Sequence record: OP557969.1
Strand: one strand, 5' to 3'
Length of the DNA: 64,000 bases
Under the pieces are notes generated by a model. It did no database searches. It saw only the letters and a program-made list of their open reading frames with translations, and had not been told where the DNA came from. The position numbers and the translations under genes are program-made. This document shows positions 3,084-54,228 of this stretch, piece after piece (the stretch's first letter is position 1; every line of letters begins with the position of its first letter).

Positions 3084-4964
3084 ATGAAACCTATCCGAGT
3101 ACTATCTCTTTTTAATGGAATGAGTGTAGGATACATGGCATTAAAAGATGCTGGTATCCCTGTTGAAAAATATTATTCATCCGAAATTGACAAATTTGCT
3201 ATAGCTGAATCCCAAGCTAACTTCCCCGATATAATCCAATTGGGTGATGTAACTAAGTGGAGAGAATGGGATATTGAATGGGACAAGATAGATCTACTGA
3301 TGGGTGGTTTTCCATGCTTCCCAGCAGGAACTATGATAATGACAAATAAAGGTCATAAAGATATAAAAGATATAAAAATTGGTGATATGGTTCTTACACA
3401 CACTGGACAGTACCAAAAAGTATTGAGTACTGGTGTTAAAAAGGCTCCCACTCGTATTATTACGGGTCAAGGTCACCTTCCAATTGAATGTACCGATAAT
3501 CATCCATTTTGGAGTAGGGAACGTCTAGCCAATAAATGGAATAATCAACGCCGAAGATATGATTCTGTGTTTTCTGAACCGCAATGGGTAAATGCTATAG
3601 ATCTTACTAAACAAAGTTATATTTGTAATGTTAAAAATATTACACATAATACTGTAAGTGATAAAGATGAAAAATATTGGTATTTTGTTGGTCGTTTTAT
3701 GGGTGATGGATGTGCTAGTGTATCTAATAACAAATACAGTATTACTATTGTAGATTCATTAGATAAAGTTGATGAATTGAAAAAATGCTTTGATGATTTT
3801 GGATACAAATACACATTAGCTATTAAAGATAATCATGTAAGATGTGATATATATAGCAAAAAGCTTTATGATGAATTAATATGTATTGGGCATAAATCAC
3901 AAAACAAATGTTTACCACCTGAAATATTCAATGAAACTATCAATAACAAAGAAGCATTTATTAAAGGATACATGGATGCAGATGGTTGTGAGGATAAACA
4001 CAATAAAAAATACAAATTTACCACCACAAGTTATAAAATAGTTCTTGGTATGCAACAGTTAATCTTAGATACTTATCAAAGTCATTGTACTATTAGCCAA
4101 ACTGTTCCAAAAACAAAAAAATATATAAAAAATAAGTTGGTTAATCAGCTTCCGTATTGGAATGTTCATTTTAGCTATAATAAAATTAAAAGAGATGATG
4201 TAATATATGATGAAATTTATATATGGAATCGTGGTGTAAAAAGTAATGTACCAACCGGAGAATGGAAAACCGTTTACAATATTGAAGTTGCAGTAGATAA
4301 CACATATACAGCGAACAATATTGTAGTTCATAACTGCCAAGCGTGGTCAGTTGCAGGTAAACAGGGTGGAATAAATGATCCTCGTGGTATGTTATTCCAT
4401 ACAATGGTTGATATTTACCAGCACATAAAAAGTCTCAATCCAGACTTGAAAGTACTGTTCGAGAATGTTAAAATGAAAGAAGATTTCAAGCAATACATTA
4501 ATAGTGTTCTTGAGATGACACCAGTACTGATAAATTCCCAGCATTATACGCCTCACTTCAGGCAGCGATATTACTGGTACAGTACTGATAAACTTTTTAT
4601 ACCACCTGCATTATCCAATGCACCTAAACTTCAAGATATTATTGAAGATGGTTGGTACACTGACAGAACCGCTTCGTACTGTATAGATGCTAACTATTTT
4701 AAGGGTGGTGATTGTAACCAGTACTTTAATAAATCAAGAAGACAAATTGTTTTCAAAGAACCTGATATCGATAGGGATTTCCTTCTTGAACATGGTAAGC
4801 GAAATGTGGACTATCGTCATTTAACAGTACAAGAGTGTTGCATGTTGCAAGGAATTGATGTAAACTACTTCAAAGTTAGTAGTTCAACACAAGCATACAA
4901 AATGCTTGGGAATGGATGGACTATGCCAGTTATATCACACTTACTACGAGATATATTCTTTTGA
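3084..4964 (+). CDS. DNA (cytosine-5)-methyltransferase, intein-containing
   Basis: Motif I LSLFNG, SEIDK, GDV, motif IV GGFP|CQ split by an intein, ENV, RQRYYW, LTVQECCMLQG, YKMLGNGW. Confidence 0.93.
   Translation: MKPIRVLSLFNGMSVGYMALKDAGIPVEKYYSSEIDKFAIAESQANFPDIIQLGDVTKWREWDIEWDKIDLLMGGFPCFPAGTMIMTNKGHKDIKDIKIGDMVLTHTGQYQKVLSTGVKKAPTRIITGQGHLPIECTDNHPFWSRERLANKWNNQRRRYDSVFSEPQWVNAIDLTKQSYICNVKNITHNTVSDKDEKYWYFVGRFMGDGCASVSNNKYSITIVDSLDKVDELKKCFDDFGYKYTLAIKDNHVRCDIYSKKLYDELICIGHKSQNKCLPPEIFNETINNKEAFIKGYMDADGCEDKHNKKYKFTTTSYKIVLGMQQLILDTYQSHCTISQTVPKTKKYIKNKLVNQLPYWNVHFSYNKIKRDDVIYDEIYIWNRGVKSNVPTGEWKTVYNIEVAVDNTYTANNIVVHNCQAWSVAGKQGGINDPRGMLFHTMVDIYQHIKSLNPDLKVLFENVKMKEDFKQYINSVLEMTPVLINSQHYTPHFRQRYYWYSTDKLFIPPALSNAPKLQDIIEDGWYTDRTASYCIDANYFKGGDCNQYFNKSRRQIVFKEPDIDRDFLLEHGKRNVDYRHLTVQECCMLQGIDVNYFKVSSSTQAYKMLGNGWTMPVISHLLRDIFF
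3315..4334 (+). mobile_element. intein (340 aa) with LAGLIDADG homing endonuclease domain
   Basis: Starts CFPAGT, block B IECTDNHPFW, LAGLIDADG-like YFVGRFMGDG and FIKGYMDADG, ends VYNIEV...IVVHN followed by Cys+1. Confidence 0.93.
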
Positions 4965-6005: not shown

Positions 6006-6454
6006 AAATCGATGAACTGATTTATATTTTAGGTAACTTGCACAAAATATTGTTACATCGCAACGAGATGAATAAACTAGGGTATAATATAACTAATTTA
6101 AATGAAACATCATTTAAATATAACTCAATCACTGGTGGAAATTATAATATTGTGTATTGTCATGAAACTGACCCTGACTGCTATCAACTTACGTTATACT
6201 TTTATCCAACAAACCCTACCATTGTTCAAGACATATCATCAATATCACTTGACCCAGATGGTGAAATGAGTATAGAATATAGCTATGATTCTAAAAAAGA
6301 ATGTTACGTTGAAGATATGAAAAATATGTTTAACGATGCATATGTGTTCCAGCTAAGTACTGTACATGATGTTGGAAGTACTAATGGGCAATTTTGGAAT
6401 ACATGCTATTATCATATGATTGGAATTTGTAAATTACTAAAAGGCGATGATTAA
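6002..6454 (+). CDS. hypothetical protein, EExxFQxS-motif family
   Basis: NDAYVFQLSTVHD. Confidence 0.8.
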   Translation: MKIDELIYILGNLHKILLHRNEMNKLGYNITNLNETSFKYNSITGGNYNIVYCHETDPDCYQLTLYFYPTNPTIVQDISSISLDPDGEMSIEYSYDSKKECYVEDMKNMFNDAYVFQLSTVHDVGSTNGQFWNTCYYHMIGICKLLKGDD

Positions 6455-11993: not shown

Positions 11994-12563
11994 ATGAACT
12001 TTATTAAATTCAACACATCTGAGTCAGAAGCATACTTTAATACAAATAATAAATTTAATATTATTCTTAAAGACGGAACGGTTGTTATCGGAGTATCATT
12101 GCTTTCATTTGATGGCGAAAAACTCGAAACTGTTTATAAATTCACCAATCTTGATGGTGATTATTGGGATACATCAGATGTATCTAAAATTTGCACACAT
12201 TATGTATTTGAATCTATTGAAGTTGGTGATGGCTGGGCATTGACCTGCAATGGTAATAAAGTATTTTCTGGTAACATATTTGGGGTAATTTCCAGTAAAG
12301 AAATAGTAGACCATCATCTTCATGTTCTCAATAATAACGCCAACACTTATACACCTGATAATATCAAAATTCACGATATTGTAACATATATTGATTATAA
12401 TGGTTTCAGACATAAAGCAATTGTAACTGAAATTAAAAAACCAAAAAATTATTTCGATCACGGTTTGATTGAAGTATATATGGTAGGTGGCGAAAAACAA
12501 TACTTTGAACATTTCACTTATACTGGTTGGGATAGATTCCTAACCGTTATTGAGGAATACTAA
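11994..12563 (+). CDS. hypothetical protein
   Basis: AAGGAG RBS. Confidence 0.8.
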   Translation: MNFIKFNTSESEAYFNTNNKFNIILKDGTVVIGVSLLSFDGEKLETVYKFTNLDGDYWDTSDVSKICTHYVFESIEVGDGWALTCNGNKVFSGNIFGVISSKEIVDHHLHVLNNNANTYTPDNIKIHDIVTYIDYNGFRHKAIVTEIKKPKNYFDHGLIEVYMVGGEKQYFEHFTYTGWDRFLTVIEEY

Positions 12564-12564
12564 C

Positions 12565-13053
12565 ATGCCGATTCGTGGTGTACCAGACCCAATACGTGAA
12601 ATTCTTAAGCACATTCGCATTGAAACACTAGAAGTTAACATGCGTCGTTATAATATATATTACTTTAAAACTTCCGAAATGAGTTCTGTACAGATTGTCA
12701 TTGGTACATCTATTAAGATTACTCGTGTACTTGATGGCAGTACTGACTTTGTTGAATACAACGTACTTACTAATAAAGTAACACATACATATAAATGGAG
12801 TGGATATAAAACTATTAAATATGAGTTTGACTTAGCTAGAACCGAAGAAGAACGATTCATGTTGAGTACTATAAATCCAGAAAACTATCCTGACATTGAT
12901 ACATTTTTGCTAATTTTAAAATTGTATAATAAAGCAAATGAGAAAGCTAAAGAGTACAATAGAATCATGTATGAACGCAAAAAAGAACGTGTACAAAAAA
13001 GTTATGATCTGTATGATAACCCATACGTGAAATATAGTAAGGGAAAGAAATGA
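12565..13053 (+). CDS. hypothetical protein, EExxFQxS-motif family
   Basis: TEEERFMLSTIN; GAGGA RBS. Confidence 0.8.
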   Translation: MPIRGVPDPIREILKHIRIETLEVNMRRYNIYYFKTSEMSSVQIVIGTSIKITRVLDGSTDFVEYNVLTNKVTHTYKWSGYKTIKYEFDLARTEEERFMLSTINPENYPDIDTFLLILKLYNKANEKAKEYNRIMYERKKERVQKSYDLYDNPYVKYSKGKK

Positions 13054-13454
13054 ATAATGAAGTTCAAATTATCATTACTCCACCTATACAAAGTCTGGAT
13101 GTAACCATTAGCGATTTTTTGGAAAAATACTATGAATGGTTTAATGAAGATTCAGTCATTTATAACCATTCATTAACGGATGGTTTTGTTGAGCTTATTG
13201 AATTAAATTCCAAATCGCTATATTTCTGTGTCGAATACAATGATTATATGACCGATGAAGCATATCGCTTTCGTTGTACATTATATCCTAACCATTTTTC
13301 TATTGGTTATAAAGACTATCAGTACTGTACCACTAACTATAGTGAAGAGGAAGAATTTCAGTACAATTTACTTTATCCAGATTTGGATTATACTATCGCA
13401 GTACTGTTGTCTAAAATCATGGATTTTTATAAAGGTAAATGTAATGCAACCTAA
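13050..13454 (+). CDS. hypothetical protein, EExxFQxS-motif family
   Basis: SEEEEFQYNLLY. Confidence 0.8.
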   Translation: MNNEVQIIITPPIQSLDVTISDFLEKYYEWFNEDSVIYNHSLTDGFVELIELNSKSLYFCVEYNDYMTDEAYRFRCTLYPNHFSIGYKDYQYCTTNYSEEEEFQYNLLYPDLDYTIAVLLSKIMDFYKGKCNAT

Positions 13455-47261: not shown

Positions 47262-47273
47262 ATTGATTAAACA

Positions 47274-47687
47274 ATGAAGAAGTGTATCGCATGTAATATT
47301 GAAAAAGACATTAGTGAATTTGGTATAAGAAAAGATACTGGGAAACATAGAAATACATGCAAAGGTTGTAGTAATATTACCAGTAAGAAAACCAGAAATA
47401 AAAAAACTGATGTCAAAAAGCTTGAAGAAATCAAAAGAAAAAATAAAGATTTCATGACCAGAGTTAAATCATTTTATGGATGTAGTATTTGTGCGATGAA
47501 GTATCCAGAATGTTTAGACTTTCACCATCTTGACCCTAATACTAAAGAACATACACCAAGTTCTATGTTCAGTAAAAGTCGAGATGCTATCAAAGATGAA
47601 ATTCGAAAGTGTATGATTCTTTGTTCTAATCATCATCGCATGGTCCATTCTGGAAGACTATGTTTAATTGAAAGAAAAAAGGGTTGA
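47274..47687 (+). CDS. zinc-finger HNH endonuclease
   Basis: CxxC...CxxC N-terminus; CSIC...LDFHH.DP..K...CMILCSNHH. Confidence 0.8.
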   Translation: MKKCIACNIEKDISEFGIRKDTGKHRNTCKGCSNITSKKTRNKKTDVKKLEEIKRKNKDFMTRVKSFYGCSICAMKYPECLDFHHLDPNTKEHTPSSMFSKSRDAIKDEIRKCMILCSNHHRMVHSGRLCLIERKKG

Positions 47688-47743
47688 CTTCTGTCAGCCC
47701 TTTTTGTTATAATCATTTCATCGAAGCTTGAGGATATTAAAAA

Positions 47744-48226
47744 ATGAACTACTTAGATTTGATTAACTCATATGTAATTAGCCCATATATTAACGATGAA
47801 AGTATTAAATGTGTAGTATCAGTTGAGGATCACCCAACTGGTGCATTAAAACTATTTGGTGCAGGTCAAATTAACAACCGCAACGGGTATACATTTGAAT
47901 ATTTACCATCAAGTGATAAGTTTGGATGTTATGACCACGAAACAAATAAGGGATATATTTGGGGAACACACTTAAGTATTGCACAATCTTCGCTTTTCGA
48001 AGACCATAATGGGTATATGTGGCGATATTTGGGTGCAGTACTGCTTGATATCGCCCGTAGGTATAAGAAGTGTATAACATTAACTTATACTCATACAAAT
48101 GAATATAAAAACGAAGTTCAAGTTAATGATGAGGAATTTTTTAAAAATATTCCTTATATTGATTTTAACTGTCAAAATGGTTATGCTACATACCCAGCAA
48201 GTTTTGAAGGTGAAAGATACTTTTAA
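47744..48226 (+). CDS. hypothetical protein
   Basis: GAGGA RBS. Confidence 0.8.
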   Translation: MNYLDLINSYVISPYINDESIKCVVSVEDHPTGALKLFGAGQINNRNGYTFEYLPSSDKFGCYDHETNKGYIWGTHLSIAQSSLFEDHNGYMWRYLGAVLLDIARRYKKCITLTYTHTNEYKNEVQVNDEEFFKNIPYIDFNCQNGYATYPASFEGERYF

Positions 48227-48319
48227 AAAAGAGTTGATTTAAAATGTATAAGTGATATACTTATCATATCAAGACGAAACAACAACCAACATGTAAACGC
48301 TACTAATTAGGAGACACAC

Positions 48320-48730
48320 ATGATCAACAAACATTTCGCAGTTTCCAAAACTGTAACCATCGATAATGAATGGGAAATTACCATTCTAAATGATACGGCT
48401 CGTGGACTACTGGCAGAGAATATTCTCCAGAAGTATATTGACTGTGAATCTGAGTTGATCATTCATGAACGCACTAAATTTCTTCTAATTGGTGGAAAGA
48501 AATGTAAAGTTCTGGTATTCACTGACAAAATGACCCGTGCAGATATCATTACTAAATTGGTTAGTTCTTCACGTCATCGTCCAGGTGTTAATAGATCAAT
48601 CGATGAGATTAAAGAAATGAAGCCAGGTGATTTATTCATTGTCGCGGGGTTTGATTCAAAAACGAGAAAAATGAGTATTTCAGAAATGTATACTAATGCT
48701 GAAATGCGTAATAAATTCTTTTCTAACTAA
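48320..48730 (+). CDS. hypothetical protein
   Basis: Own promoter; AGGAG RBS. Confidence 0.8.
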   Translation: MINKHFAVSKTVTIDNEWEITILNDTARGLLAENILQKYIDCESELIIHERTKFLLIGGKKCKVLVFTDKMTRADIITKLVSSSRHRPGVNRSIDEIKEMKPGDLFIVAGFDSKTRKMSISEMYTNAEMRNKFFSN

Positions 48731-48776
48731 TCAACCCGTGTAGTGTAATTTTATACACATTTTAGATGGATAAAAT

Positions 48777-49982
48777 ATGATCTTCGAAACTGAAAAAACA
48801 TTACTTGAAACTTACACTTTGGATAATCTAGTTAAACTTAACCTTGAACGACCAGATATCCAACGCAATTGGCAATGGAAAAATAATAACCAAAACAATC
48901 TTATTATTTCTATTCTAAAGAATTCTCCAATTGGTCAATTTTTGGTATGGAATGAAACTAGCTCGAATACTATGTACATCACTGATGGTCGTCATCGCTA
49001 TACAGTAATTTCAAACTTCATGAACAATAAATTTCCAGTCACTGTTAGAACTGAAGATGGGACTAAGGATTATTATTATGGTTCTGATGATCCAGTAGAA
49101 GAAGAAAACATTTCACTGAAACTTGGTGGAAAACGTAAAACATGGGATTTTTTATCTAAAGAAGAGCGTGATGCGTTTCGTGCAAAGGAAGTATCAGTAA
49201 CATTCGTTCATACCGACGATGCTGAAAAGATTTCAGATATGTTTATTGCAATTAATACTGCATCATCTAATCTATGTAAAGTGGATTTGTTAGTATGTAA
49301 GCACCACACAAATACATATATGAAACGTATTGATAAGCTATTTTCAATTGAGTTTGGTAAAGATGAACCCATGGCATCATTAGTTAGTGATTTTTACCGT
49401 GCAATCGGTCATTGTTGTGTTAATGGTAATCATGAGAAACACTTATCAAAGCTTAAAGCTAACCCTAAAGTACAGAAGCGTGAATTTTTTGAAATGTTCT
49501 TTATGGTCAAAGCGTTCGCGAAATTATGTGCTAGTGCACTAGATGGTAAGCTAAACTCATACCGTATGCCAAAGATGAACCAACAAATTGAAGAAGCAAT
49601 TATTAGTACTGAATCTCTTAGTGAGAAACATGCTGATGCTGATTTTGTTCAGTTTGTTAATGCAGTTCGTGAGATGAATTTAGTATCACCTGTAAAATCT
49701 GCACAAAAATTTCAATTTATCCATGAAGATATGAAGAATACCTTTAATAAGAGACTCTTTTGTATTTTGATGGGATTGTTTTATGCTTATGGTACAAGAT
49801 TGCCATTACATTTTCGTGATGTATGGGGTGACATTTATAATGAAATGTCAGAAAAAAGTTCAGAACTACCTACTAATGGAACCGATAGTCCTTCCGCAAT
49901 TTTAGCTGGCATTGAAATGATTGAACCATACTTTAGTTCAGCATTCAATAATATTCCATTGAGTGCTTACGTGGGAAAGTGA
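48777..49982 (+). CDS. DUF262 (GmrSD-N / ParB-like) domain protein
   Basis: RPDIQRNWQW, LIISILKNSPIG, ITDGRHR, DMFIAINT match the DUF262 QR..W / SI..P / DGQQR / F..IN motifs. Confidence 0.8.
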   Translation: MIFETEKTLLETYTLDNLVKLNLERPDIQRNWQWKNNNQNNLIISILKNSPIGQFLVWNETSSNTMYITDGRHRYTVISNFMNNKFPVTVRTEDGTKDYYYGSDDPVEEENISLKLGGKRKTWDFLSKEERDAFRAKEVSVTFVHTDDAEKISDMFIAINTASSNLCKVDLLVCKHHTNTYMKRIDKLFSIEFGKDEPMASLVSDFYRAIGHCCVNGNHEKHLSKLKANPKVQKREFFEMFFMVKAFAKLCASALDGKLNSYRMPKMNQQIEEAIISTESLSEKHADADFVQFVNAVREMNLVSPVKSAQKFQFIHEDMKNTFNKRLFCILMGLFYAYGTRLPLHFRDVWGDIYNEMSEKSSELPTNGTDSPSAILAGIEMIEPYFSSAFNNIPLSAYVGK

Positions 49983-50191
49983 AAAAACGTGGTGTACTAA
50001 ATACACTACAAAAACAATATCTTTTGAAAAGATATTCTTTGTGTTATCTTTGTGGACAGAAGATATCGGATTCAGATATACTACATTTTGACCATGTTCA
50101 ATCATTAAAAGATGGTGGTAGTAATGAATTAAGTAATATACGACCAACGCACTCCATTTGTAATTTACGTAAAGGTGCTAAGAGTATGTAA
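49979..50191 (+). CDS. small HNH endonuclease (70 aa)
   Basis: CYLCG...HFDHV.....GGSN...NIRPTHSICNLRKG; GTGA overlap with the DUF262 stop. Confidence 0.85.
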   Translation: MKKRGVLNTLQKQYLLKRYSLCYLCGQKISDSDILHFDHVQSLKDGGSNELSNIRPTHSICNLRKGAKSM

Positions 50192-50240
50192 AGCTAATAC
50201 TCCCCAAAGATGGGGAGTATATATAATTAAAGGGATTTAT

Positions 50241-51077
50241 ATGAGTATTAAAAATAAATTAGATCAGTATTATACAAATCCAGAGTATGCTAAAAAATGT
50301 TATACTAAATCATTAGAGTTTATTTCGTCTCGAATGGACATTAATTCATCTTATTATATGGAGCCTTGTGTTGGGACTGGTTCGTTTTATCTACAGTTTC
50401 CTGAATCCCGTCGATTTGGGTGTGACATTGATCCGGTACATCTTGATGAAAATGTTATCCATTCCGATTTTTTACTTGAATTTGGTATCAATGCAAGAAG
50501 TAAAGGTGAACCAATACTTGTTATAAGTAATCCACCTTTTGGAAAAATTTCTTCTTTAGCCATTAAGTTTTTTAATAAATGTGCATCAATGCCTGAAGTG
50601 AAATATATTTGTTTTATTGTCCCTATGACATTTCGAAAAGCAGCAACACAAAATAAACTCAATGAGATGTTTCACCTGGTATTGGATGAAGATTCTCCAA
50701 ATGACGCTTTTATACTGCACGGAGAACCACATCATGTACCATGCGTGTTTCAGATATGGGAACGTAGGGATACAGTTCGTGAGAAACATGAGATTAAGAA
50801 CAAATCAGACTATTTCGATTATTGTACTAAGGAAGAGGCTGATGTTTTTATAAAACGTGTAGGAACCAAAGCAGGTGAGTATGCCGAGCCAGGGAAAGAA
50901 CACAAAGATGCAAGTATGTACTACATCAAAACTAAGTATGTTGATGAAATCATTAAGGTTTTGAAAAGTAAAGATTACCTTGATGAGATAAAACGTATAC
51001 GTAAAACCACAGCAGGGGTATACTGTGTGTCCAAATCTGAAATCGTTCTTAATATTGAAAAACGTTTGAATCTTTGA
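50241..51077 (+). CDS. DNA amino-methyltransferase (N6-A or N4-C), gamma-type motif order
   Basis: DQYYT, motif I EPCVGTGSF, motif IV SNPPFG. Confidence 0.8.
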   Translation: MSIKNKLDQYYTNPEYAKKCYTKSLEFISSRMDINSSYYMEPCVGTGSFYLQFPESRRFGCDIDPVHLDENVIHSDFLLEFGINARSKGEPILVISNPPFGKISSLAIKFFNKCASMPEVKYICFIVPMTFRKAATQNKLNEMFHLVLDEDSPNDAFILHGEPHHVPCVFQIWERRDTVREKHEIKNKSDYFDYCTKEEADVFIKRVGTKAGEYAEPGKEHKDASMYYIKTKYVDEIIKVLKSKDYLDEIKRIRKTTAGVYCVSKSEIVLNIEKRLNL

Positions 51078-51145
51078 AAATTATAGGTTGACTTCGGTCA
51101 GCCTTTATTGTTATAATCATTTTATATAAACAAGAGGATGATTAC

Positions 51146-51649
51146 ATGACACGCATTAATTTAGTACACGTTAAAGAGCTTGCTGACCAACATTTGATGG
51201 CTGAATATCGTGAACTTCCACGGGTGTTCGGTGCTGTACAAAAACACGTCCAAGCACGTAAGAGTGTCCGTAATTTCAAAATTAACAGTACTTATCTGTT
51301 AGGTTCAGGTCATGTGACATTTTTCTACGACAAGTTACTGTACTTACAAAAGCGTCATGTTGAGATTGTCAACGAATGTTTGCGTCGTGGTATGAAGATT
51401 CAAAACACAGAAGTAAACGACATTAGCAGCTTCCCTGATGAGTTTTGTAATGACTACGTACCTTCGGAGTCAGAGATTAAAATGTCTCGTGACCGTTTGA
51501 TTGAGAAGCTCCAGATGAAGCCTAAGTGGTATAAGTTTACTGCTGTTGAAATTCCACAGTACGTTAAAGATATGCAGAACGTAAAATCTAGTACTGATAT
51601 GTTCGAAGAAATTGAAGAGCAAATCAAAGATGAAATGAATAATTATTAA
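51146..51649 (+). CDS. denV: endonuclease V, pyrimidine-dimer DNA glycosylase
   Basis: MTRINL...[19 protein letters not shown]...[13 protein letters not shown] as in T4 DenV. Confidence 0.95.
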
Positions 51650-51716
51650 AGGTAAGGGTTGACTTCGGTCAACCCTTTTTGCTATAATCATTTCATCAAC
51701 TACAGAGGGTAACGAA

Positions 51717-52552: not shown

Positions 52553-52894
52553 ATGCTTGAGTTTTTTAATTCAAATACAATGCTTGGTATTACTTTAATT
52601 TACATGTTTGTATTTTTGTTTTATCATTCAATTGTAATTAGCCTGTGGTATTTTAAAAGGAAAGTTGTTTTTAAATTGTATTCGTATGATAATGTATTCT
52701 TAGTTGTATATAGTATTGTACAAGGTGGGTTTATTTTATTTGGTATTATGACTTATTTCATTTATCGATTGGAAATTGATAATACACCACACATTACACA
52801 ATATGTTGTGTTTTCTGGACTAATCGTGTGGTTGTTGACATGTGTCGTGTACTTTATTATTAAAGCTCGTGACAAAATTAAAGGGGAATTCTAA
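52553..52894 (+). CDS. three-TM membrane protein family, array B
   Basis: LWYFKRK; C-terminal ARDKIKGEF. Confidence 0.85.
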   Translation: MLEFFNSNTMLGITLIYMFVFLFYHSIVISLWYFKRKVVFKLYSYDNVFLVVYSIVQGGFILFGIMTYFIYRLEIDNTPHITQYVVFSGLIVWLLTCVVYFIIKARDKIKGEF

Positions 52895-53232
52895 TGTTAA
52901 CATTTTTTCAGTCAGATACAATGATTAGTATTACGTTGATTTATCTGTTTGGATTTTTCTTTTATCATGCACTAGTTGTAGTACTATGGTATTTTAAAAA
53001 GAATATAGTTTTCAAACTGTATCCTAAAGGAAACGTTTCATTACTTCTTTTCACTATTATCCAAGGTATCTTTGCAATTTTTGGTATTACTGCACATTTA
53101 ATTTATTGTGCTAATCCACATTTGAACTCAATATCACAATACATTGTATTTTTTGGATTACTAATTTGGGTACTAATATACGTAACTAATCTCATCATTA
53201 ATGGTAGAGCTAAAATTCACGGAGACTTTTAA
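52894..53232 (+). CDS. three-TM membrane protein family, array B
   Basis: Close paralog of the previous gene. Confidence 0.85.
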   Translation: MLTFFQSDTMISITLIYLFGFFFYHALVVVLWYFKKNIVFKLYPKGNVSLLLFTIIQGIFAIFGITAHLIYCANPHLNSISQYIVFFGLLIWVLIYVTNLIINGRAKIHGDF

Positions 53233-53579
53233 TGTTTGAATCTTATCTTGACTTTTTAAGGAATAGTCCAGTAGCACACTCACTTGCTGGGATTGTTCTA
53301 TCAGGCTATATCACATTTTGGGTAGTTATGTTTCTAGGATGGTATTTTAAACGACAATTCTATAAGCGTAACGGTGAAGATTTTATGAATTCTGCTATTA
53401 ATCAATCGTTGTTTGCATCAACATTGATAGCATCAATTGTAGCAACACTCACTGGTGCAGTTCTATCAGCATTCGCCGCAGTTTACGGCACACTTGGAGT
53501 GGTATGTTTATCTTTAATATTGATCATTAAACTTTGTTGTGTTATGATTGAACTTCGAAATAAGATACCGGAGGAATGA
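53232..53579 (+). CDS. three-TM membrane protein family, array B
   Basis: GWYFKRQ; LRNKIPEE. Confidence 0.85.
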   Translation: MFESYLDFLRNSPVAHSLAGIVLSGYITFWVVMFLGWYFKRQFYKRNGEDFMNSAINQSLFASTLIASIVATLTGAVLSAFAAVYGTLGVVCLSLILIIKLCCVMIELRNKIPEE

Positions 53580-53914
53580 TGGAGTATTTTATTGATTTAC
53601 TGCCGTGGTATATGAAAGTGAGTATTTTATACTATATTATTAGTACTGGATTCTACTTCCTGATGTGGTTTTTTAAACGACCAATTTCAGTGTACATTGC
53701 TGATAACATGCTGCAATTAAAATTACAAGCATGGTTTTATATGGCGATGTTTATGCCTATTATTCACTATTCAATGATTAGTCTAGGTTTACGTTCTAAT
53801 GGTGAACCAATTGTATTAGTATTCTATTGGACTTCAACTCTAGTATATGTCGGTTTGTTGTTATACCCAATCGTTCATATATTACGTGCTAAAGTTCCTG
53901 ATGCGAGGTACTAA
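53576..53914 (+). CDS. three-TM membrane protein family, array B
   Basis: MWFFKRP; LRAKVPD. Confidence 0.85.
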   Translation: MMEYFIDLLPWYMKVSILYYIISTGFYFLMWFFKRPISVYIADNMLQLKLQAWFYMAMFMPIIHYSMISLGLRSNGEPIVLVFYWTSTLVYVGLLLYPIVHILRAKVPDARY

Positions 53915-54228
53915 TGGATATAGTAACATTGATTTACACGTTGTATTCATTCTATTTTATTATGTGTTGGATTGGATTTTTATTTGTACTGAAGACGTTT
54001 GATTATGTTGAAAGACAGATAAAAGAATTTTGTATTCCTTTTATTGGGTCAACCATAATTAGTATTACTTGTTTGTATTATTTGGTATGTGATCCACCAG
54101 ATAACACTGCAATGATTGACTTTATGTTAGCACCAACTACTGTTATTTTTTTATGTAGTCTGCTGCCACCTATTAGTCGTGGGTTAGCAGAATTTAGACG
54201 CAAACAAAAGCTTAAACGAGGGATGTAA
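53914..54228 (+). CDS. three-TM membrane protein family, array B
   Basis: Three TMs, basic C-terminus. Confidence 0.8.
   Translation: MDIVTLIYTLYSFYFIMCWIGFLFVLKTFDYVERQIKEFCIPFIGSTIISITCLYYLVCDPPDNTAMIDFMLAPTTVIFLCSLLPPISRGLAEFRRKQKLKRGM

What the first reader, a model, noticed from the sequence alone, without database searches (positions are those of the whole stretch)
48777..51077. Phage-encoded DUF262 + overlapping mini-HNH + amino-MTase: split GmrSD-like nuclease module beside a methyltransferase
Seen: a 401-aa protein with DUF262 motifs (QRNWQW, SILKNSP, DGRHR, FIAIN) ends on a GTGA overlap with a 70-aa HNH gene. A hairpin (tactcccc-aaagat-ggggagta) and an NPPF-type MTase follow, then denV. 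Knowledge: GmrSD/BrxU type IV enzymes are DUF262 NTP-binding domains fused to an HNH-like DUF1524 nuclease and cut modified-cytosine DNA such as T-even glucosyl-hmC; SspE also uses DUF262. These are normally bacterial defence genes. Inference: a lytic phage may carry a two-chain modification-sensing nuclease to destroy co-infecting modified phages or host DNA, with the MTase marking self. The overlap implies 1:1 translational coupling, or possibly a frameshift fusion that rebuilds the GmrSD architecture.
Basis: partly seen in the sequence, partly recalled or inferred. Interest (0 to 1): 0.75.

Follow-up and report, generated by a model that had tools for sequence, protein, structure and literature searches.

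The report
Frameshift-fused DUF262–HNH nuclease in jumbo phage
A giant E. coli phage carries a GmrSD-like DNA-sensing gene whose HNH cutting domain can apparently be made only when the ribosome slips back one base at a conserved lambda-type slippery site, and this recoded nuclease travels with a small partner gene and a DNA methyltransferase.

Summary
Window 48777-49982 encodes a 401-aa DUF262/GmrSD_N protein, 49979-50191 a 70-aa HNH domain that GenBank does not annotate, 50241-51077 a gamma-class adenine methyltransferase, followed by denV. The window is Escherichia phage ph0011 (Asteriusvirus).

The main result concerns how the HNH domain is made. It lies in the -1 frame. The DUF262 ORF ends on G_GGA_AAG (49973-49979), the slippery heptamer of lambda G/GT. 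The heptamer is present in the correct phase in all nine homologous lineages found, down to 21% protein identity. The 0-frame stop lies 0, 1 or 6 codons after it. Only two lineages have a start codon at the junction, and two have none upstream of the catalytic residues. The HNH frame is under purifying selection. Distant relatives carry DUF262 and HNH in a single ORF of 409-586 aa.

I therefore read the gene as a programmed -1 frameshift giving a 401-aa sensor-only product and a 471-aa sensor-nuclease product, not two coupled chains.

A 136-aa partner gene co-occurs in seven of the eight lineages where the upstream gene can be seen, and the methyltransferase in seven of nine. Function is inferred only: a phage-borne restriction-modification-like or selfish cassette. 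No protein or cleavage data exist.

The parts
47263..51083 (+). Accessory segment of about 3.8 kb, present in ph0011 and absent from phage 121Q, where gp216 is followed directly by denV
   Evidence: Alignment of both junctions with 121Q. A megablast of 48300-51700 finds full coverage only in ph0011; the other 35 records match only the denV end.
47274..47687 (+). Free-standing HNH endonuclease (137 aa), homing-endonuclease type
   Evidence: phrog_2255 HNH endonuclease at E 3.9e-32. It is 48% identical to GAP32_516, which also sits just upstream of the module in GAP32.
47744..48226 (+). 160-aa protein of unknown function, shared only with the closest relative (L003)
   Evidence: No Pfam, PHROG or PADLOC hit. 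It is 82% identical to the L003 neighbour.
48320..48730 (+). 136-aa partner protein co-conserved with the DUF262 gene; possibly a PD-(D/E)XK (restriction-endonuclease-like) fold
   Evidence: Homologues lie immediately upstream of the DUF262 gene in window, L003, L005, L008, L013, L015/16 and GAP32. dN/dS is 0.04-0.09. The AF2 model has pLDDT 75 and pTM 0.71. The best structural neighbours are nearly all PD-(D/E)XK enzymes, but weakly so (Z up to 5.8). No clear (D/E)xK motif is present.
48777..49982 (+). 0-frame ORF of 401 aa: ParB-type DUF262 NTPase/sensor domain plus a helical NsnA-C/ParBDB-like domain. This is the termination product.
   Evidence: Pfam GmrSD_N at E 9.9e-18. PADLOC NsnA at E 2.1e-15 aligns residues 25-386 to 68-379 of 385. 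A profile hit to BrxU 7p9k covers the N-terminus. Q29, R30, W34, D70 and R74 are invariant. dN/dS is 0.06-0.10.
49973..49979 (+). Slippery heptamer G_GGA_AAG, the proposed -1 ribosomal frameshift site, followed at once by the 0-frame stop TGA
   Evidence: It is in X_XXY_YYZ phase and conserved in all nine lineages. The chance of this codon choice is 0.0076 per lineage. It is the same heptamer as lambda G/GT (PMC3296357) and is described as highly shift-prone in E. coli (PMC5009743).
49989..50009 (+). 8-bp stem-loop starting 9 nt after the heptamer; a possible frameshift stimulator
   Evidence: MFE fold with z = -3.3. L003 keeps the stem through compensatory changes. The 50007 T>C change seen in four metagenome assemblies turns a G.U pair into G-C. 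Comparable stems occur in only 5 of 9 lineages.
49979..50191 (+). -1-frame extension of 70 codons encoding a zinc-finger HNH nuclease domain (CxxC...DH...N...HxxC). Predicted to be made as the C-terminus of a 471-aa trans-frame product.
   Evidence: Pfam HNH at E 1.1e-11. It aligns across nine lineages with catalytic residues kept. dN/dS is 0.12-0.31. The -1 frame is open for only 1-9 codons upstream of the heptamer. The gene is unannotated in GenBank.
50198..50219 (+). Conserved G+C-rich hairpin between the HNH stop and the methyltransferase ribosome-binding site
   Evidence: Read directly from the sequence. It is kept with compensatory changes in L003, L005 and L008 and is absent in GAP32. 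It did not meet the terminator scan criteria.
50241..51077 (+). Gamma-class N6-adenine-type DNA methyltransferase (278 aa; motif I EPCVGTGSF, motif IV NPPF)
   Evidence: PADLOC MTase_II at E 5.7e-34 and phrog_5172 at E 1.7e-89. It is 69-72% identical to the GAP32 and L016 copies and adjacent to the recoded gene in 7 of 9 lineages. dN/dS is 0.05-0.07.
51085..51117 (+). Hairpin with embedded TTGACT-N18-TATAAT promoter; right-hand boundary of the accessory segment, upstream of denV
   Evidence: Scan result. Similarity to 121Q resumes here.

Best explanation
Window 48777-50191 is one recoded gene. Most ribosomes terminate at TGA 49980-49982 and release a 401-aa protein made of a ParB-type DUF262 NTPase/sensor domain and a helical DNA-binding domain, the NsnA-like architecture. 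A fraction of ribosomes slip back one base on G_GGA_AAG (49973-49979), with tRNA-Gly re-pairing GGA to GGG and tRNA-Lys re-pairing AAG to AAA. They then read 70 further codons and produce a 471-aa protein with a C-terminal zinc-finger HNH nuclease. That product has the architecture of single-chain bacterial DUF262-HNH proteins and is functionally analogous to GmrSD, BrxU and SspE.

The recoded gene forms a unit with the 136-aa upstream gene and usually with a gamma-class adenine methyltransferase. The unit lies in a mobile accessory segment of jumbo phages.

Inferred function: a phage-borne restriction-modification-like weapon. The DUF262 and helical domains read the modification state of DNA, the HNH domain nicks or cuts DNA classed as foreign (host or co-infecting phage DNA), and the methyltransferase marks the phage's own genome. 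Frameshifting fixes a low ratio of nuclease-bearing to nuclease-free protomers.

What is shown and what is inferred:
- Shown by sequence comparison: the domains, the frame relationship, conservation of the heptamer, the missing start codons, purifying selection and the synteny.
- Inferred: that frameshifting actually occurs and at what efficiency, the substrate, the direction of modification dependence, and the role of the small protein.

My confidence is about 0.85 for the frameshift fusion and about 0.45 for the restriction-modification-like function.
For: **Heptamer conservation.** The heptamer is in the correct phase at the end of the DUF262 ORF in all nine lineages: window, L003, L005, L008, GAP32 (L010), L013, L014, L015/16 (also L025) and L017. 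These span 21-88% protein identity and form five clusters below 50% identity. GTGGGAAAG is the only long invariant block in the junction alignment. From the window's own codon usage, the probability of G at the preceding third position plus GGA plus AAG is 0.0076 per lineage, or about 2.5e-11 for five independent clusters.

**Frame layout.** The 0-frame stop lies 0 codons after the heptamer in seven lineages, 1 codon in L005 and 6 codons in L008. The -1 frame opens only 1-9 codons before the heptamer.

**Start codons in the HNH frame.** Only window and L003 have a GTG at the junction. L017 has no ATG, GTG or TTG at all, and L014 has only a TTG at codon 64. The other five lineages have candidates only 12-18 codons downstream.

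**Selection.** The HNH catalytic and zinc ligands are conserved, and dN/dS of the HNH tail is 0.12-0.31.

**Natural fusions.** Ten distant DUF262 relatives of 409-586 aa carry GmrSD_N and PF01844 in one ORF. Atlas neighbours include bacterial clusters with GmrSD_N plus HNH.

**Controls.** A second in-frame GGGAAAG at window 13041 is lost in relatives about 90% identical. A DUF262 gene from a P22-like phage has neither heptamer nor HNH.

**Literature.** GGGAAAG is the lambda G/GT slippery site (PMC3296357), and G_GGA_AAG is described as highly shift-prone in E. coli (PMC5009743).

**Downstream structure.** Stem-loops start 4-12 nt after the heptamer in 5 of 9 lineages, with covariation between ph0011 and L003.

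**Module.** The small gene is co-conserved, and the methyltransferase is adjacent in 7 of 9 lineages, in a different order in L014. Within Asteriusvirus the methyltransferase and the DUF262 gene occur together in ph0011 only.
Against: - No protein-level evidence exists for the 471-aa product, and frameshift efficiency is unknown.
- Two lineages (GAP32 and L016) show no downstream stem-loop.
- In ph0011 and L003 a GTG at the junction would also allow independent initiation or termination-reinitiation. In five lineages an internal ATG, GTG or TTG 12-18 codons downstream could give a truncated HNH.
- On function: related methyltransferases stand alone in the replication modules of rV5-like and phAPEC8-like phages, with no DUF262 gene nearby. 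L013 and L017 have no recognisable methyltransferase next to the gene. The pairing may therefore be physical linkage only.
- The methyltransferase is 69% identical between ph0011 and GAP32, while DUF262 is 22% and the small protein 20%. The parts do not share a simple common history.
- The structure model of the DUF262 protein failed (pLDDT 33).
Confidence: 0.6

Rival explanations
1. Two separate polypeptides. The DUF262 protein and a free 70-aa HNH protein are made in about 1:1 ratio by translational coupling at the GTGA overlap and then assemble into a GmrS/GmrD-like two-chain enzyme.
For: In ph0011 and L003 a GTG overlaps the stop as G-TGA. E. coli CT596 GmrS and GmrD are separate subunits acting in complex (PMC12707154).
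Against: Seven of nine lineages have no start codon at the junction, and L014 and L017 have none before the catalytic motif. There is no Shine-Dalgarno sequence at a useful spacing, since GGGA ends 2 nt before the GTG. Coupling does not explain the absolute conservation of the heptamer phase.
Confidence: 0.07
2. A selfish homing-type cassette. The recoded nuclease mainly cuts cassette-free relatives during co-infection so that the cassette is copied in by repair. The methyltransferase, the small protein or both protect the carrier genome. Defence or host degradation would be secondary. This reading overlaps mechanistically with the best explanation.
For: - The segment sits between conserved genes (gp216 and denV) and is absent from about 35 Asteriusvirus genomes, several of which carry an HNH endonuclease gene next to denV.
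- Free-standing homing-type endonuclease genes flank the module in ph0011 (47274), GAP32 (gp516), L013 and L014.
- Near-identical copies occur in at least 16 public runs from sludge and gut samples.
- Module parts have discordant histories.
Against: Known homing endonucleases do not use an NTPase sensor domain or a companion methyltransferase. No target site has been identified. All genes are under strong purifying selection over deep divergence, which argues for a function useful to the phage.
Confidence: 0.2
3. The DUF262 protein is mainly a DndB-like DNA-binding regulator or partition-type factor for the neighbouring methyltransferase. The HNH tail is a rare, dispensable by-product.
For: There is a weak Pfam DndB match (E 5.4e-05, below the family cut-off). 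The abundant product lacks a nuclease. The NsnA-type architecture is regarded as a sensor and DNA binder (PMC12065111).
Against: The HNH frame, its catalytic residues and the heptamer are conserved across all lineages, with dN/dS below 0.31. That is not expected for a dispensable by-product.
Confidence: 0.1
4. A decaying gene or a sequencing error: a once-fused DUF262-HNH gene broken by a 1-nt indel.
For: Single-ORF DUF262-HNH relatives exist.
Against: The same frame arrangement occurs in nine lineages and in four independent assemblies with no indel. Both frames are under purifying selection.
Confidence: 0.02

Closest known systems
GmrSD / BrxU (type IV modification-dependent restriction enzymes; BrxU structure 7p9k)
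   Same: An N-terminal DUF262 ParB-type NTP-binding domain with the QR...W and DGxxR motifs, a helical middle domain, and a C-terminal His-Me finger nuclease. GmrS and GmrD also exist as a split version (PMC12707154, PMC12065111).
   Different: The nuclease here is PF01844 HNH with zinc ligands, not DUF1524. It is joined by a ribosomal frameshift, not by fusion or complex formation. It is encoded by a lytic jumbo phage and linked to a methyltransferase. The substrate is unknown.
Single-ORF bacterial and phage DUF262-HNH proteins (for example the Halobacillus naozhouensis protein P0086 and the jumbo-phage-like contig protein P0044)
   Same: The same domain order and a similar size (409-475 aa, against 471 aa for the predicted trans-frame product). 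The HNH tails match an HMM built from the phage tails.
   Different: They are encoded in one frame. P0086 sits alone in an integrase/retron-type island with no methyltransferase or small partner nearby. They share only distant DUF262 similarity with the ph0011 protein. I found no functional study of them.
Lambda G/GT tail-assembly chaperone frameshift
   Same: The identical slippery heptamer G_GGA_AAG. A -1 shift near the end of the upstream ORF gives a short major product and a C-terminally extended minor product in a fixed ratio (PMC3296357; PMC5009743).
   Different: The protein family and purpose are unrelated. Here the extension is a catalytic nuclease domain and the stop codon usually abuts the heptamer.
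IS3-family transposases (IS911 OrfA/OrfAB) and dnaX tau/gamma (comparison from my own knowledge)
   Same: A -1 frameshift decides whether a DNA-binding N-terminal protein is made alone or fused to a further functional part. In IS911 the short form modulates the long form.
   Different: The slippery site is different (A_AAA_AAG), and so are the families. No transposition or replication role is expected here.
SspABCD-SspE and Menshen NsnA
   Same: SspE is a DUF262-nuclease that works with a self-modification module. NsnA has the same DUF262 plus helical DNA-binding architecture as the 401-aa product (PADLOC NsnA at E 2.1e-15; PMC12065111).
   Different: No ssp, dnd, nsnB or nsnC genes are nearby. 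The modification gene here is a methyltransferase, and the effector is in the same gene through recoding.
Phage self-marking plus nuclease strategies (T4 hmC with endonucleases II and IV; chlorovirus restriction-modification systems; comparison from my own knowledge)
   Same: A virus marks its own DNA and encodes a nuclease that can destroy unmarked DNA.
   Different: This is an analogy of logic only. There is no homology and no experimental link here.

Membership tests
GmrSD family (DUF262 + DUF1524 type IV enzymes) | N-terminal DUF262/GmrSD_N domain with the conserved QR...W and DGxxR nucleotide-binding motifs | tested here: met
   Pfam PF03235 at E 9.9e-18, 65.4 bits against a cut-off of 33.2. 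Q29, R30, W34, D70 and R74 are invariant in nine sequences.
GmrSD family (DUF262 + DUF1524 type IV enzymes) | C-terminal DUF1524 (PF07510) His-Me nuclease domain | tested here: not met
   The -1-frame domain matches only PF01844 HNH and PF14279 HNH_5. No DUF1524 match appears at E up to 0.1.
GmrSD family (DUF262 + DUF1524 type IV enzymes) | NTP-stimulated cleavage of DNA with modified cytosines (hmC, glucosyl-hmC) | not testable with these tools
   Needs a biochemical assay.
Programmed -1 ribosomal frameshift site | X_XXY_YYZ slippery heptamer in the 0 frame inside the overlap of the two ORFs | tested here: met
   G_GGA_AAG at 49973-49979, phase checked in nine lineages.
Programmed -1 ribosomal frameshift site | Downstream ORF in the -1 frame with no independent initiation signal | tested here: met
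   Seven of nine lineages have no start codon at the junction. L017 has none at all and L014 none before codon 64. ph0011 itself does have a GTG.
Programmed -1 ribosomal frameshift site | Conservation of the heptamer beyond what the encoded amino acids require | tested here: met
   GGA and AAG are minority codons here (23% and 25%), and G at the third position is 13%. Joint probability is 0.0076 per lineage. An unrelated in-frame heptamer at 13041 is not conserved.
Programmed -1 ribosomal frameshift site | Stimulatory element (downstream stem-loop or pseudoknot, or upstream SD-like sequence) | tested here: inconclusive
   Stem-loops start 4-12 nt downstream in 5 of 9 lineages (z -1.5 to -4.4) and none in GAP32 or L016. 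No consistent upstream SD-like element was seen by eye.
Programmed -1 ribosomal frameshift site | Detection of the trans-frame protein | not testable with these tools
   No proteomic or ribosome-profiling data were available.
Single-chain DUF262-HNH proteins (GmrSD_N + PF01844) | Both domains in N-to-C order in one polypeptide of about 410-475 aa | tested here: inconclusive
   The predicted trans-frame product of 471 aa has this layout, and ten natural single-ORF examples were confirmed. The polypeptide itself is not demonstrated here.
Menshen (NsnABC) | NsnA-like DUF262 plus ParBDB protein followed by an NsnB ABC-ATPase and an NsnC effector | tested here: not met
   An NsnA-like match is present, but the neighbours have no ATPase or NsnC match in Pfam, PHROG or PADLOC.
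Type II restriction-modification system | DNA methyltransferase with SAM-binding motif I and catalytic (D/N/S)PP(Y/F) motif | tested here: met
   EPCVGTGSF and NPPF are read from the sequence. PADLOC MTase_II at E 5.7e-34.
Type II restriction-modification system | Adjacent endonuclease whose cleavage is blocked by the cognate methylation | not testable with these tools
   Candidate nucleases are present: the HNH fusion, and the 136-aa protein with a weak PD-(D/E)XK-like fold (best Z 5.8). Specificity and methyl-sensitivity need experiments.

The most novel reading that the evidence does not exclude
A family confined to jumbo phages uses programmed -1 frameshifting to set the ratio of nuclease-free to nuclease-bearing protomers of a DUF262 sensor. 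Mixed oligomers, together with the small PD-(D/E)XK-like partner and the methyltransferase, form a phage-borne self/non-self DNA discrimination system that destroys host or rival-phage DNA. Because slippage on AAG depends on tRNA-Lys modification and supply, nuclease dosage could also respond to the state of the host translation apparatus. This would be a new use of recoding in the phage-host and phage-phage arms race.
Probability: 0.25. Interest if true: 0.85.

Novelty: new variant of a known kind. Interest (0 to 1): 0.72.

Why it matters
DUF262 nucleases (GmrSD, BrxU, SspE) are known as bacterial anti-phage enzymes. Here a lytic jumbo phage carries one, and the nuclease domain appears reachable only through ribosomal frameshifting.

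If this is confirmed, four things follow:
- It adds a nuclease to the short list of phage genes that use programmed -1 frameshifting, which so far consists mainly of tail chaperones, dnaX-like genes and transposases.
- It would show a way to dose a potentially self-toxic nuclease and to build sensor-only and sensor-nuclease mixed complexes.
- It is a candidate phage-versus-phage or phage-versus-host weapon linked to self-methylation.
- It exposes an annotation gap. The HNH ORF is missing from the GenBank records of ph0011 and GAP32, and gene callers skipped it in most of the metagenomic contigs examined.

It also matters for phage-therapy candidates such as ph0011, because a restriction-like cassette affects co-infection and cocktail design.

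Tried and rejected
- **AlphaFold2 of the 401-aa protein** with four close sequences gave pLDDT 33, which is unusable, so I ran no fold search on it.
- **PDB sequence searches.** DUF262 matched only the BrxU N-terminus. The methyltransferase matched nothing. The HNH gave only marginal hits.
- **Small-protein structure searches** returned only weak matches. They are consistently PD-(D/E)XK enzymes but below the tool's own noise guide of Z 8. No catalytic motif was found, so I do not call it a nuclease.
- **Small protein versus the small genes next to the methyltransferase homologues** in rV5 (gp097) and the phapecoctavirus nieznany (gp203). HMM E was 2e-4 in a three-sequence database and hhalign probability 7%. 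This is suggestive at most and was not adopted.
- **The L014 141-aa gene** in the partner position shows no detectable homology to the small protein.
- **Searches for more family members.** IMG/VR scans with five queries found only one more copy, from the GAP32-like lineage in a 355-kb contig. The scan of 185,579 species genomes found only an unrelated DUF262 motif match in an archaeal MAG. The JGI metagenome scan found nothing. A profile search of 1.84 billion representatives found only five full-length clusters.
- **The alignment of nine sequences** was too divergent for pattern-based locus search.
- **Second in-frame heptamer at 13041.** Checked and rejected as chance.
- **Transcriptional slippage.** The A6 run after the stop exists only in ph0011 and is not conserved, so I rejected it.
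- **Literature searches** found no description of a recoded DUF262-HNH gene.
- **RNA runs.** Those holding this sequence were few and held little of it, so transcript ends were not examined.


Full report
**Identity of the window and check of the observation**

The region is 100% identical to Escherichia phage ph0011 (OP557969.1, genus Asteriusvirus, 348 kb).

- A 401-aa ORF at 48777-49982 with Pfam GmrSD_N/DUF262 (E 9.9e-18) and the cited motifs.
- A 70-aa ORF at 49979-50191 with Pfam HNH (E 1.1e-11), overlapping the first as G-TGA.
- A hairpin at 50198-50219.
- A methyltransferase at 50241-51077 with NPPF (PADLOC MTase_II at E 5.7e-34, phrog_5172 at E 1.7e-89).
- denV at 51146-51649.

The GenBank record annotates the DUF262 gene as hypothetical and does not annotate the HNH ORF. 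Contigs from four unrelated metagenome studies are over 99% identical over 48300-51100 with no indel at the junction, so the frame arrangement is real.

**Genomic setting**

In phage 121Q, gp216 is followed directly by denV. Aligning both junctions shows that ph0011 carries an extra segment of about 3.8 kb (window about 47263-51083) between the gp216 stop and the promoter-hairpin upstream of denV. Of 36 phage records that match the region by DNA, only ph0011 covers more than the denV end.

The segment contains, in order:

- a free-standing HNH endonuclease of homing type (47274-47687, phrog_2255);
- a 160-aa ORF of unknown function;
- a 136-aa ORF;
- the DUF262 gene with its HNH tail;
- a hairpin;
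- the methyltransferase.

**The key finding: the HNH domain is in the -1 frame behind a conserved slippery heptamer**

The DUF262 ORF ends ...GTG GGA AAG TGA. The seven bases G_GGA_AAG (49973-49979) form an X_XXY_YYZ slippery site. After a -1 slip the ribosome reads GGG AAA GTG AAA AAA CGT..., which is the HNH frame. The product would be 401 + 70 = 471 residues.

GGGAAAG is the slippery sequence of the lambda G/GT frameshift (PMC3296357, Table 1). G_GGA_AAG is described as highly shift-prone in E. coli (PMC5009743).

I collected every relative I could find:

- Four close clusters came from a 5.8-billion-protein search.
- Five full-length clusters came from a profile search of 1.84 billion representatives.
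- Cronobacter phage GAP32 came from tblastn.
- I then read their contigs.

This gives nine lineages, with DUF262 identity to ph0011 of 88, 75, 76, 32, 28, 23, 22 and 21%. They fall into five clusters below 50% identity.

In all nine lineages:

- The ORF ends with the heptamer in the correct phase.
- The 0-frame stop lies 0 codons (seven lineages), 1 codon (L005) or 6 codons (L008) later.
- An HNH domain follows in the -1 frame.
- The -1 frame is open for only 1-9 codons upstream of the heptamer.

In the DNA alignment of the junction, GTGGGAAAG is the only long invariant block apart from the methyltransferase start.

Start codons in the HNH frame vary. Only ph0011 and L003 have a start codon (GTG) at the junction. 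L017 has no ATG, GTG or TTG anywhere in the HNH ORF, and L014 has only a TTG at codon 64. The other five have candidates only 12-18 codons downstream, which would cut off a conserved basic segment.

From the window's own codon usage, GGA is 23% of Gly codons, AAG is 25% of Lys codons, and G is 13% of third positions. The joint probability is 0.0076 per lineage, or about 2.5e-11 for five independent clusters.

Two internal controls behave as chance would predict:

- A second in-frame GGGAAAG at 13041, also two codons before a stop with the next ORF in the -1 frame, is replaced in relatives about 90% identical.
- A DUF262 gene from a P22-like phage contig (P0155) has neither heptamer nor HNH.

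The HNH tail keeps its CxxC, DH, N and HxxC residues in all lineages. Its dN/dS is 0.12-0.31 where measurable, against 0.06-0.10 for DUF262, 0.04-0.09 for the small gene and 0.05-0.07 for the methyltransferase.

Stem-loops start 4-12 nt after the heptamer in five of nine lineages (ph0011, L003, L013, L014, L017; z -1.5 to -4.4). The ph0011 stem (49989-50009) is kept in L003 through double compensatory changes. It is strengthened by 50007 T>C in four metagenome assemblies. GAP32 and L016 have no such stem. Lambda G/GT also works without a strong structure (my own knowledge), so I treat this element as supportive but not required.

**Natural fusions**

An HMM built from the nine HNH tails hits the C-termini of distant DUF262 proteins returned by the profile search. 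Pfam confirms GmrSD_N plus PF01844 HNH in ten of them, 409-586 aa long.

- One (P0086) lies in the Halobacillus naozhouensis chromosome, in an integrase and reverse-transcriptase island with no methyltransferase next to it.
- Another (P0044) lies in a 371-kb contig made of small unannotated genes, probably a jumbo phage.

The ESM Atlas neighbours of the ph0011 protein are DUF262 clusters that include 'HNH endonuclease family protein' and GmrSD_N plus HNH families. The predicted trans-frame product therefore reproduces an existing single-chain architecture.

**What the two products are**

The 401-aa product aligns over residues 25-386 with the PADLOC NsnA model (E 2.1e-15). That corresponds to a ParB-type DUF262 NTPase domain followed by the helical 'ParBDB' DNA-binding domain that NsnA shares with the middle regions of GmrSD and SspE (PMC12065111). 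The profile also hits the N-terminus of BrxU (7p9k). The long product adds the HNH nuclease.

This is not a strict GmrSD member, because the nuclease is PF01844 rather than DUF1524. It is not Menshen either, because no NsnB or NsnC is nearby.

**The module**

A homologue of the 136-aa gene lies immediately upstream of the DUF262 gene in seven lineages. In L014 a 141-aa gene with no detectable similarity holds that position, and in L017 the contig ends too early to tell.

The AF2 model of the small protein is moderately confident (pLDDT 75, pTM 0.71). The GAP32 counterpart is its top structural match (TM 0.76). Its other neighbours in four libraries are overwhelmingly PD-(D/E)XK enzymes such as ThaI, I-Ssp6803I, NhoI, DpnI and HinP1I. 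Scores are below the tool's noise guide (best Z 5.8) and there is no clear (D/E)xK motif. I treat this as a restriction-endonuclease-like fold at low confidence and leave the role open.

The methyltransferase is adjacent in seven of nine lineages. It is downstream in most and upstream in L014. L013 and L017 have other genes there.

Between ph0011 and GAP32 the three parts differ sharply in divergence:

| Protein | Identity, ph0011 vs GAP32 |
|---|---|
| Methyltransferase | 69% |
| DUF262 | 22% |
| Small protein | 20% |
| Neighbouring core protein | 51% |

So the sensor-nuclease and its partner evolve together and fast, or are exchanged as a unit, next to a conservative methyltransferase.

More distant members of the methyltransferase family (35-37% identity) stand alone in the replication modules of rV5-like and phAPEC8-like phages. 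The enzyme can therefore work as an orphan phage methylase. Within Asteriusvirus the methyltransferase and the DUF262 gene are present together in ph0011 only.

Homing-type endonuclease genes flank the module in four lineages. No close family member was found in 185,579 species genomes. All contexts that can be judged look like large phages.

**Mechanism, and what is shown versus inferred**

Shown by comparative sequence analysis:

- the domains and the frame relationship;
- the conserved slippery site;
- the lack of independent initiation in most lineages;
- purifying selection on both frames;
- the existence of in-frame fusions elsewhere;
- the synteny with the small gene and the methyltransferase.

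Inferred:

- that ribosomes shift at a useful rate, giving a short major and a long minor product;
- that the long form is an NTP-dependent nuclease or nickase;
- that the DUF262 and helical domains read DNA modification state, by analogy with GmrSD, BrxU and SspE;
- that the methyltransferase marks the phage genome as self.

The conserved pairing with a methyltransferase makes the second at least as likely. A selfish, homing-like role is a serious overlapping alternative.

**Novelty**

Full-text searches found no description of recoding in DUF262 or GmrSD-like genes, or of this phage module. The reviews I read list DUF262 systems as bacterial defences. I class the finding as a new variant of a known kind. 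The domains and the frameshift signal are known. The new points are their combination, the phage location and the three-gene module.

**Limits**

- There is no protein, transcript-end or activity data.
- The DUF262 structure model failed.
- The family is small (five deep clusters), so the synteny statistics are descriptive.

Noticed in passing
window 13041-13047 (ORF 12550-13053 and ORF 13050-13454): A second in-frame G_GGA_AAG lies two codons before a stop, and the next ORF is in the -1 frame. It looks like a second frameshift site. The heptamer is replaced (GGGGTCG, GGGGAGA) in UE-S1, PBECO4 and phAPEC6, and the downstream ORF has its own ATG, so it is most likely chance. It served as a negative control.
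   Followed up: yes
window 49979-50191; L010 (GAP32) 6131-6364: The HNH reading frame is not annotated in the GenBank records of ph0011 or GAP32. Gene callers skipped it in most metagenomic contigs, calling it only in L004.
   Followed up: yes
window 47684-47713, 51085-51117, 51654-51688: A recurring intergenic unit: a G+C-rich hairpin (AGGTTGACTTCGGTCA[A/G]CC) whose 5' arm contains the -35 box TTGACT, followed 18 nt later by TATAAT, with a TG extension. It appears to be a combined terminator and promoter punctuating this gene array, and it marks the right-hand boundary of the accessory segment.
   Followed up: partly
window 48320-48730; L011 (rV5) 3782-4240; L012 (nieznany) 2560-2991: The small genes beside the methyltransferase homologues of rV5-like phages (gp097, 152 aa) and phAPEC8-like phages (gp203, 143 aa) are homologous to each other. 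They show a faint, collinear similarity to the 136-aa partner protein (HMM E 2e-4 in a three-sequence database, hhalign probability 7%, a BFVD hit at TM about 0.5). If real, the ancestral pair would be small protein plus methyltransferase, with the recoded DUF262-HNH gene inserted between them.
   Followed up: partly
window 47274-47687; L010 3581-4360; L013 234-1487; L014 6453-7145: Free-standing homing-type endonuclease genes (phrog_2255, phrog_681/559) flank the DUF262-HNH module in four lineages. Several other Asteriusvirus genomes carry an HNH endonuclease gene next to denV. The gp216/denV junction looks like a hotspot for mobile nuclease genes.
   Followed up: partly
window 50217-50230: One metagenome assembly (X2) has four extra bases (TATA) in the TA-repeat just after the hairpin between HNH and the methyltransferase. 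X2 and X5 also share A>T changes at 50208 (hairpin loop) and 50226.
   Followed up: no
window 52553-54228: A tandem array of at least five similar small genes (104-115 aa) encodes hydrophobic, probably membrane, proteins with related N-termini. They overlap head to tail (ATGA-type junctions) downstream of the AAA-like gene. GAP32 has 'putative membrane protein' genes in the corresponding place.
   Followed up: no
window 48300-51100: At least 16 public runs from sludge, gut and aquatic samples hold near-identical copies of the cassette (word share 0.29-0.85). Phages with this cassette are therefore commoner in nature than the single isolate genome suggests.
   Followed up: partly
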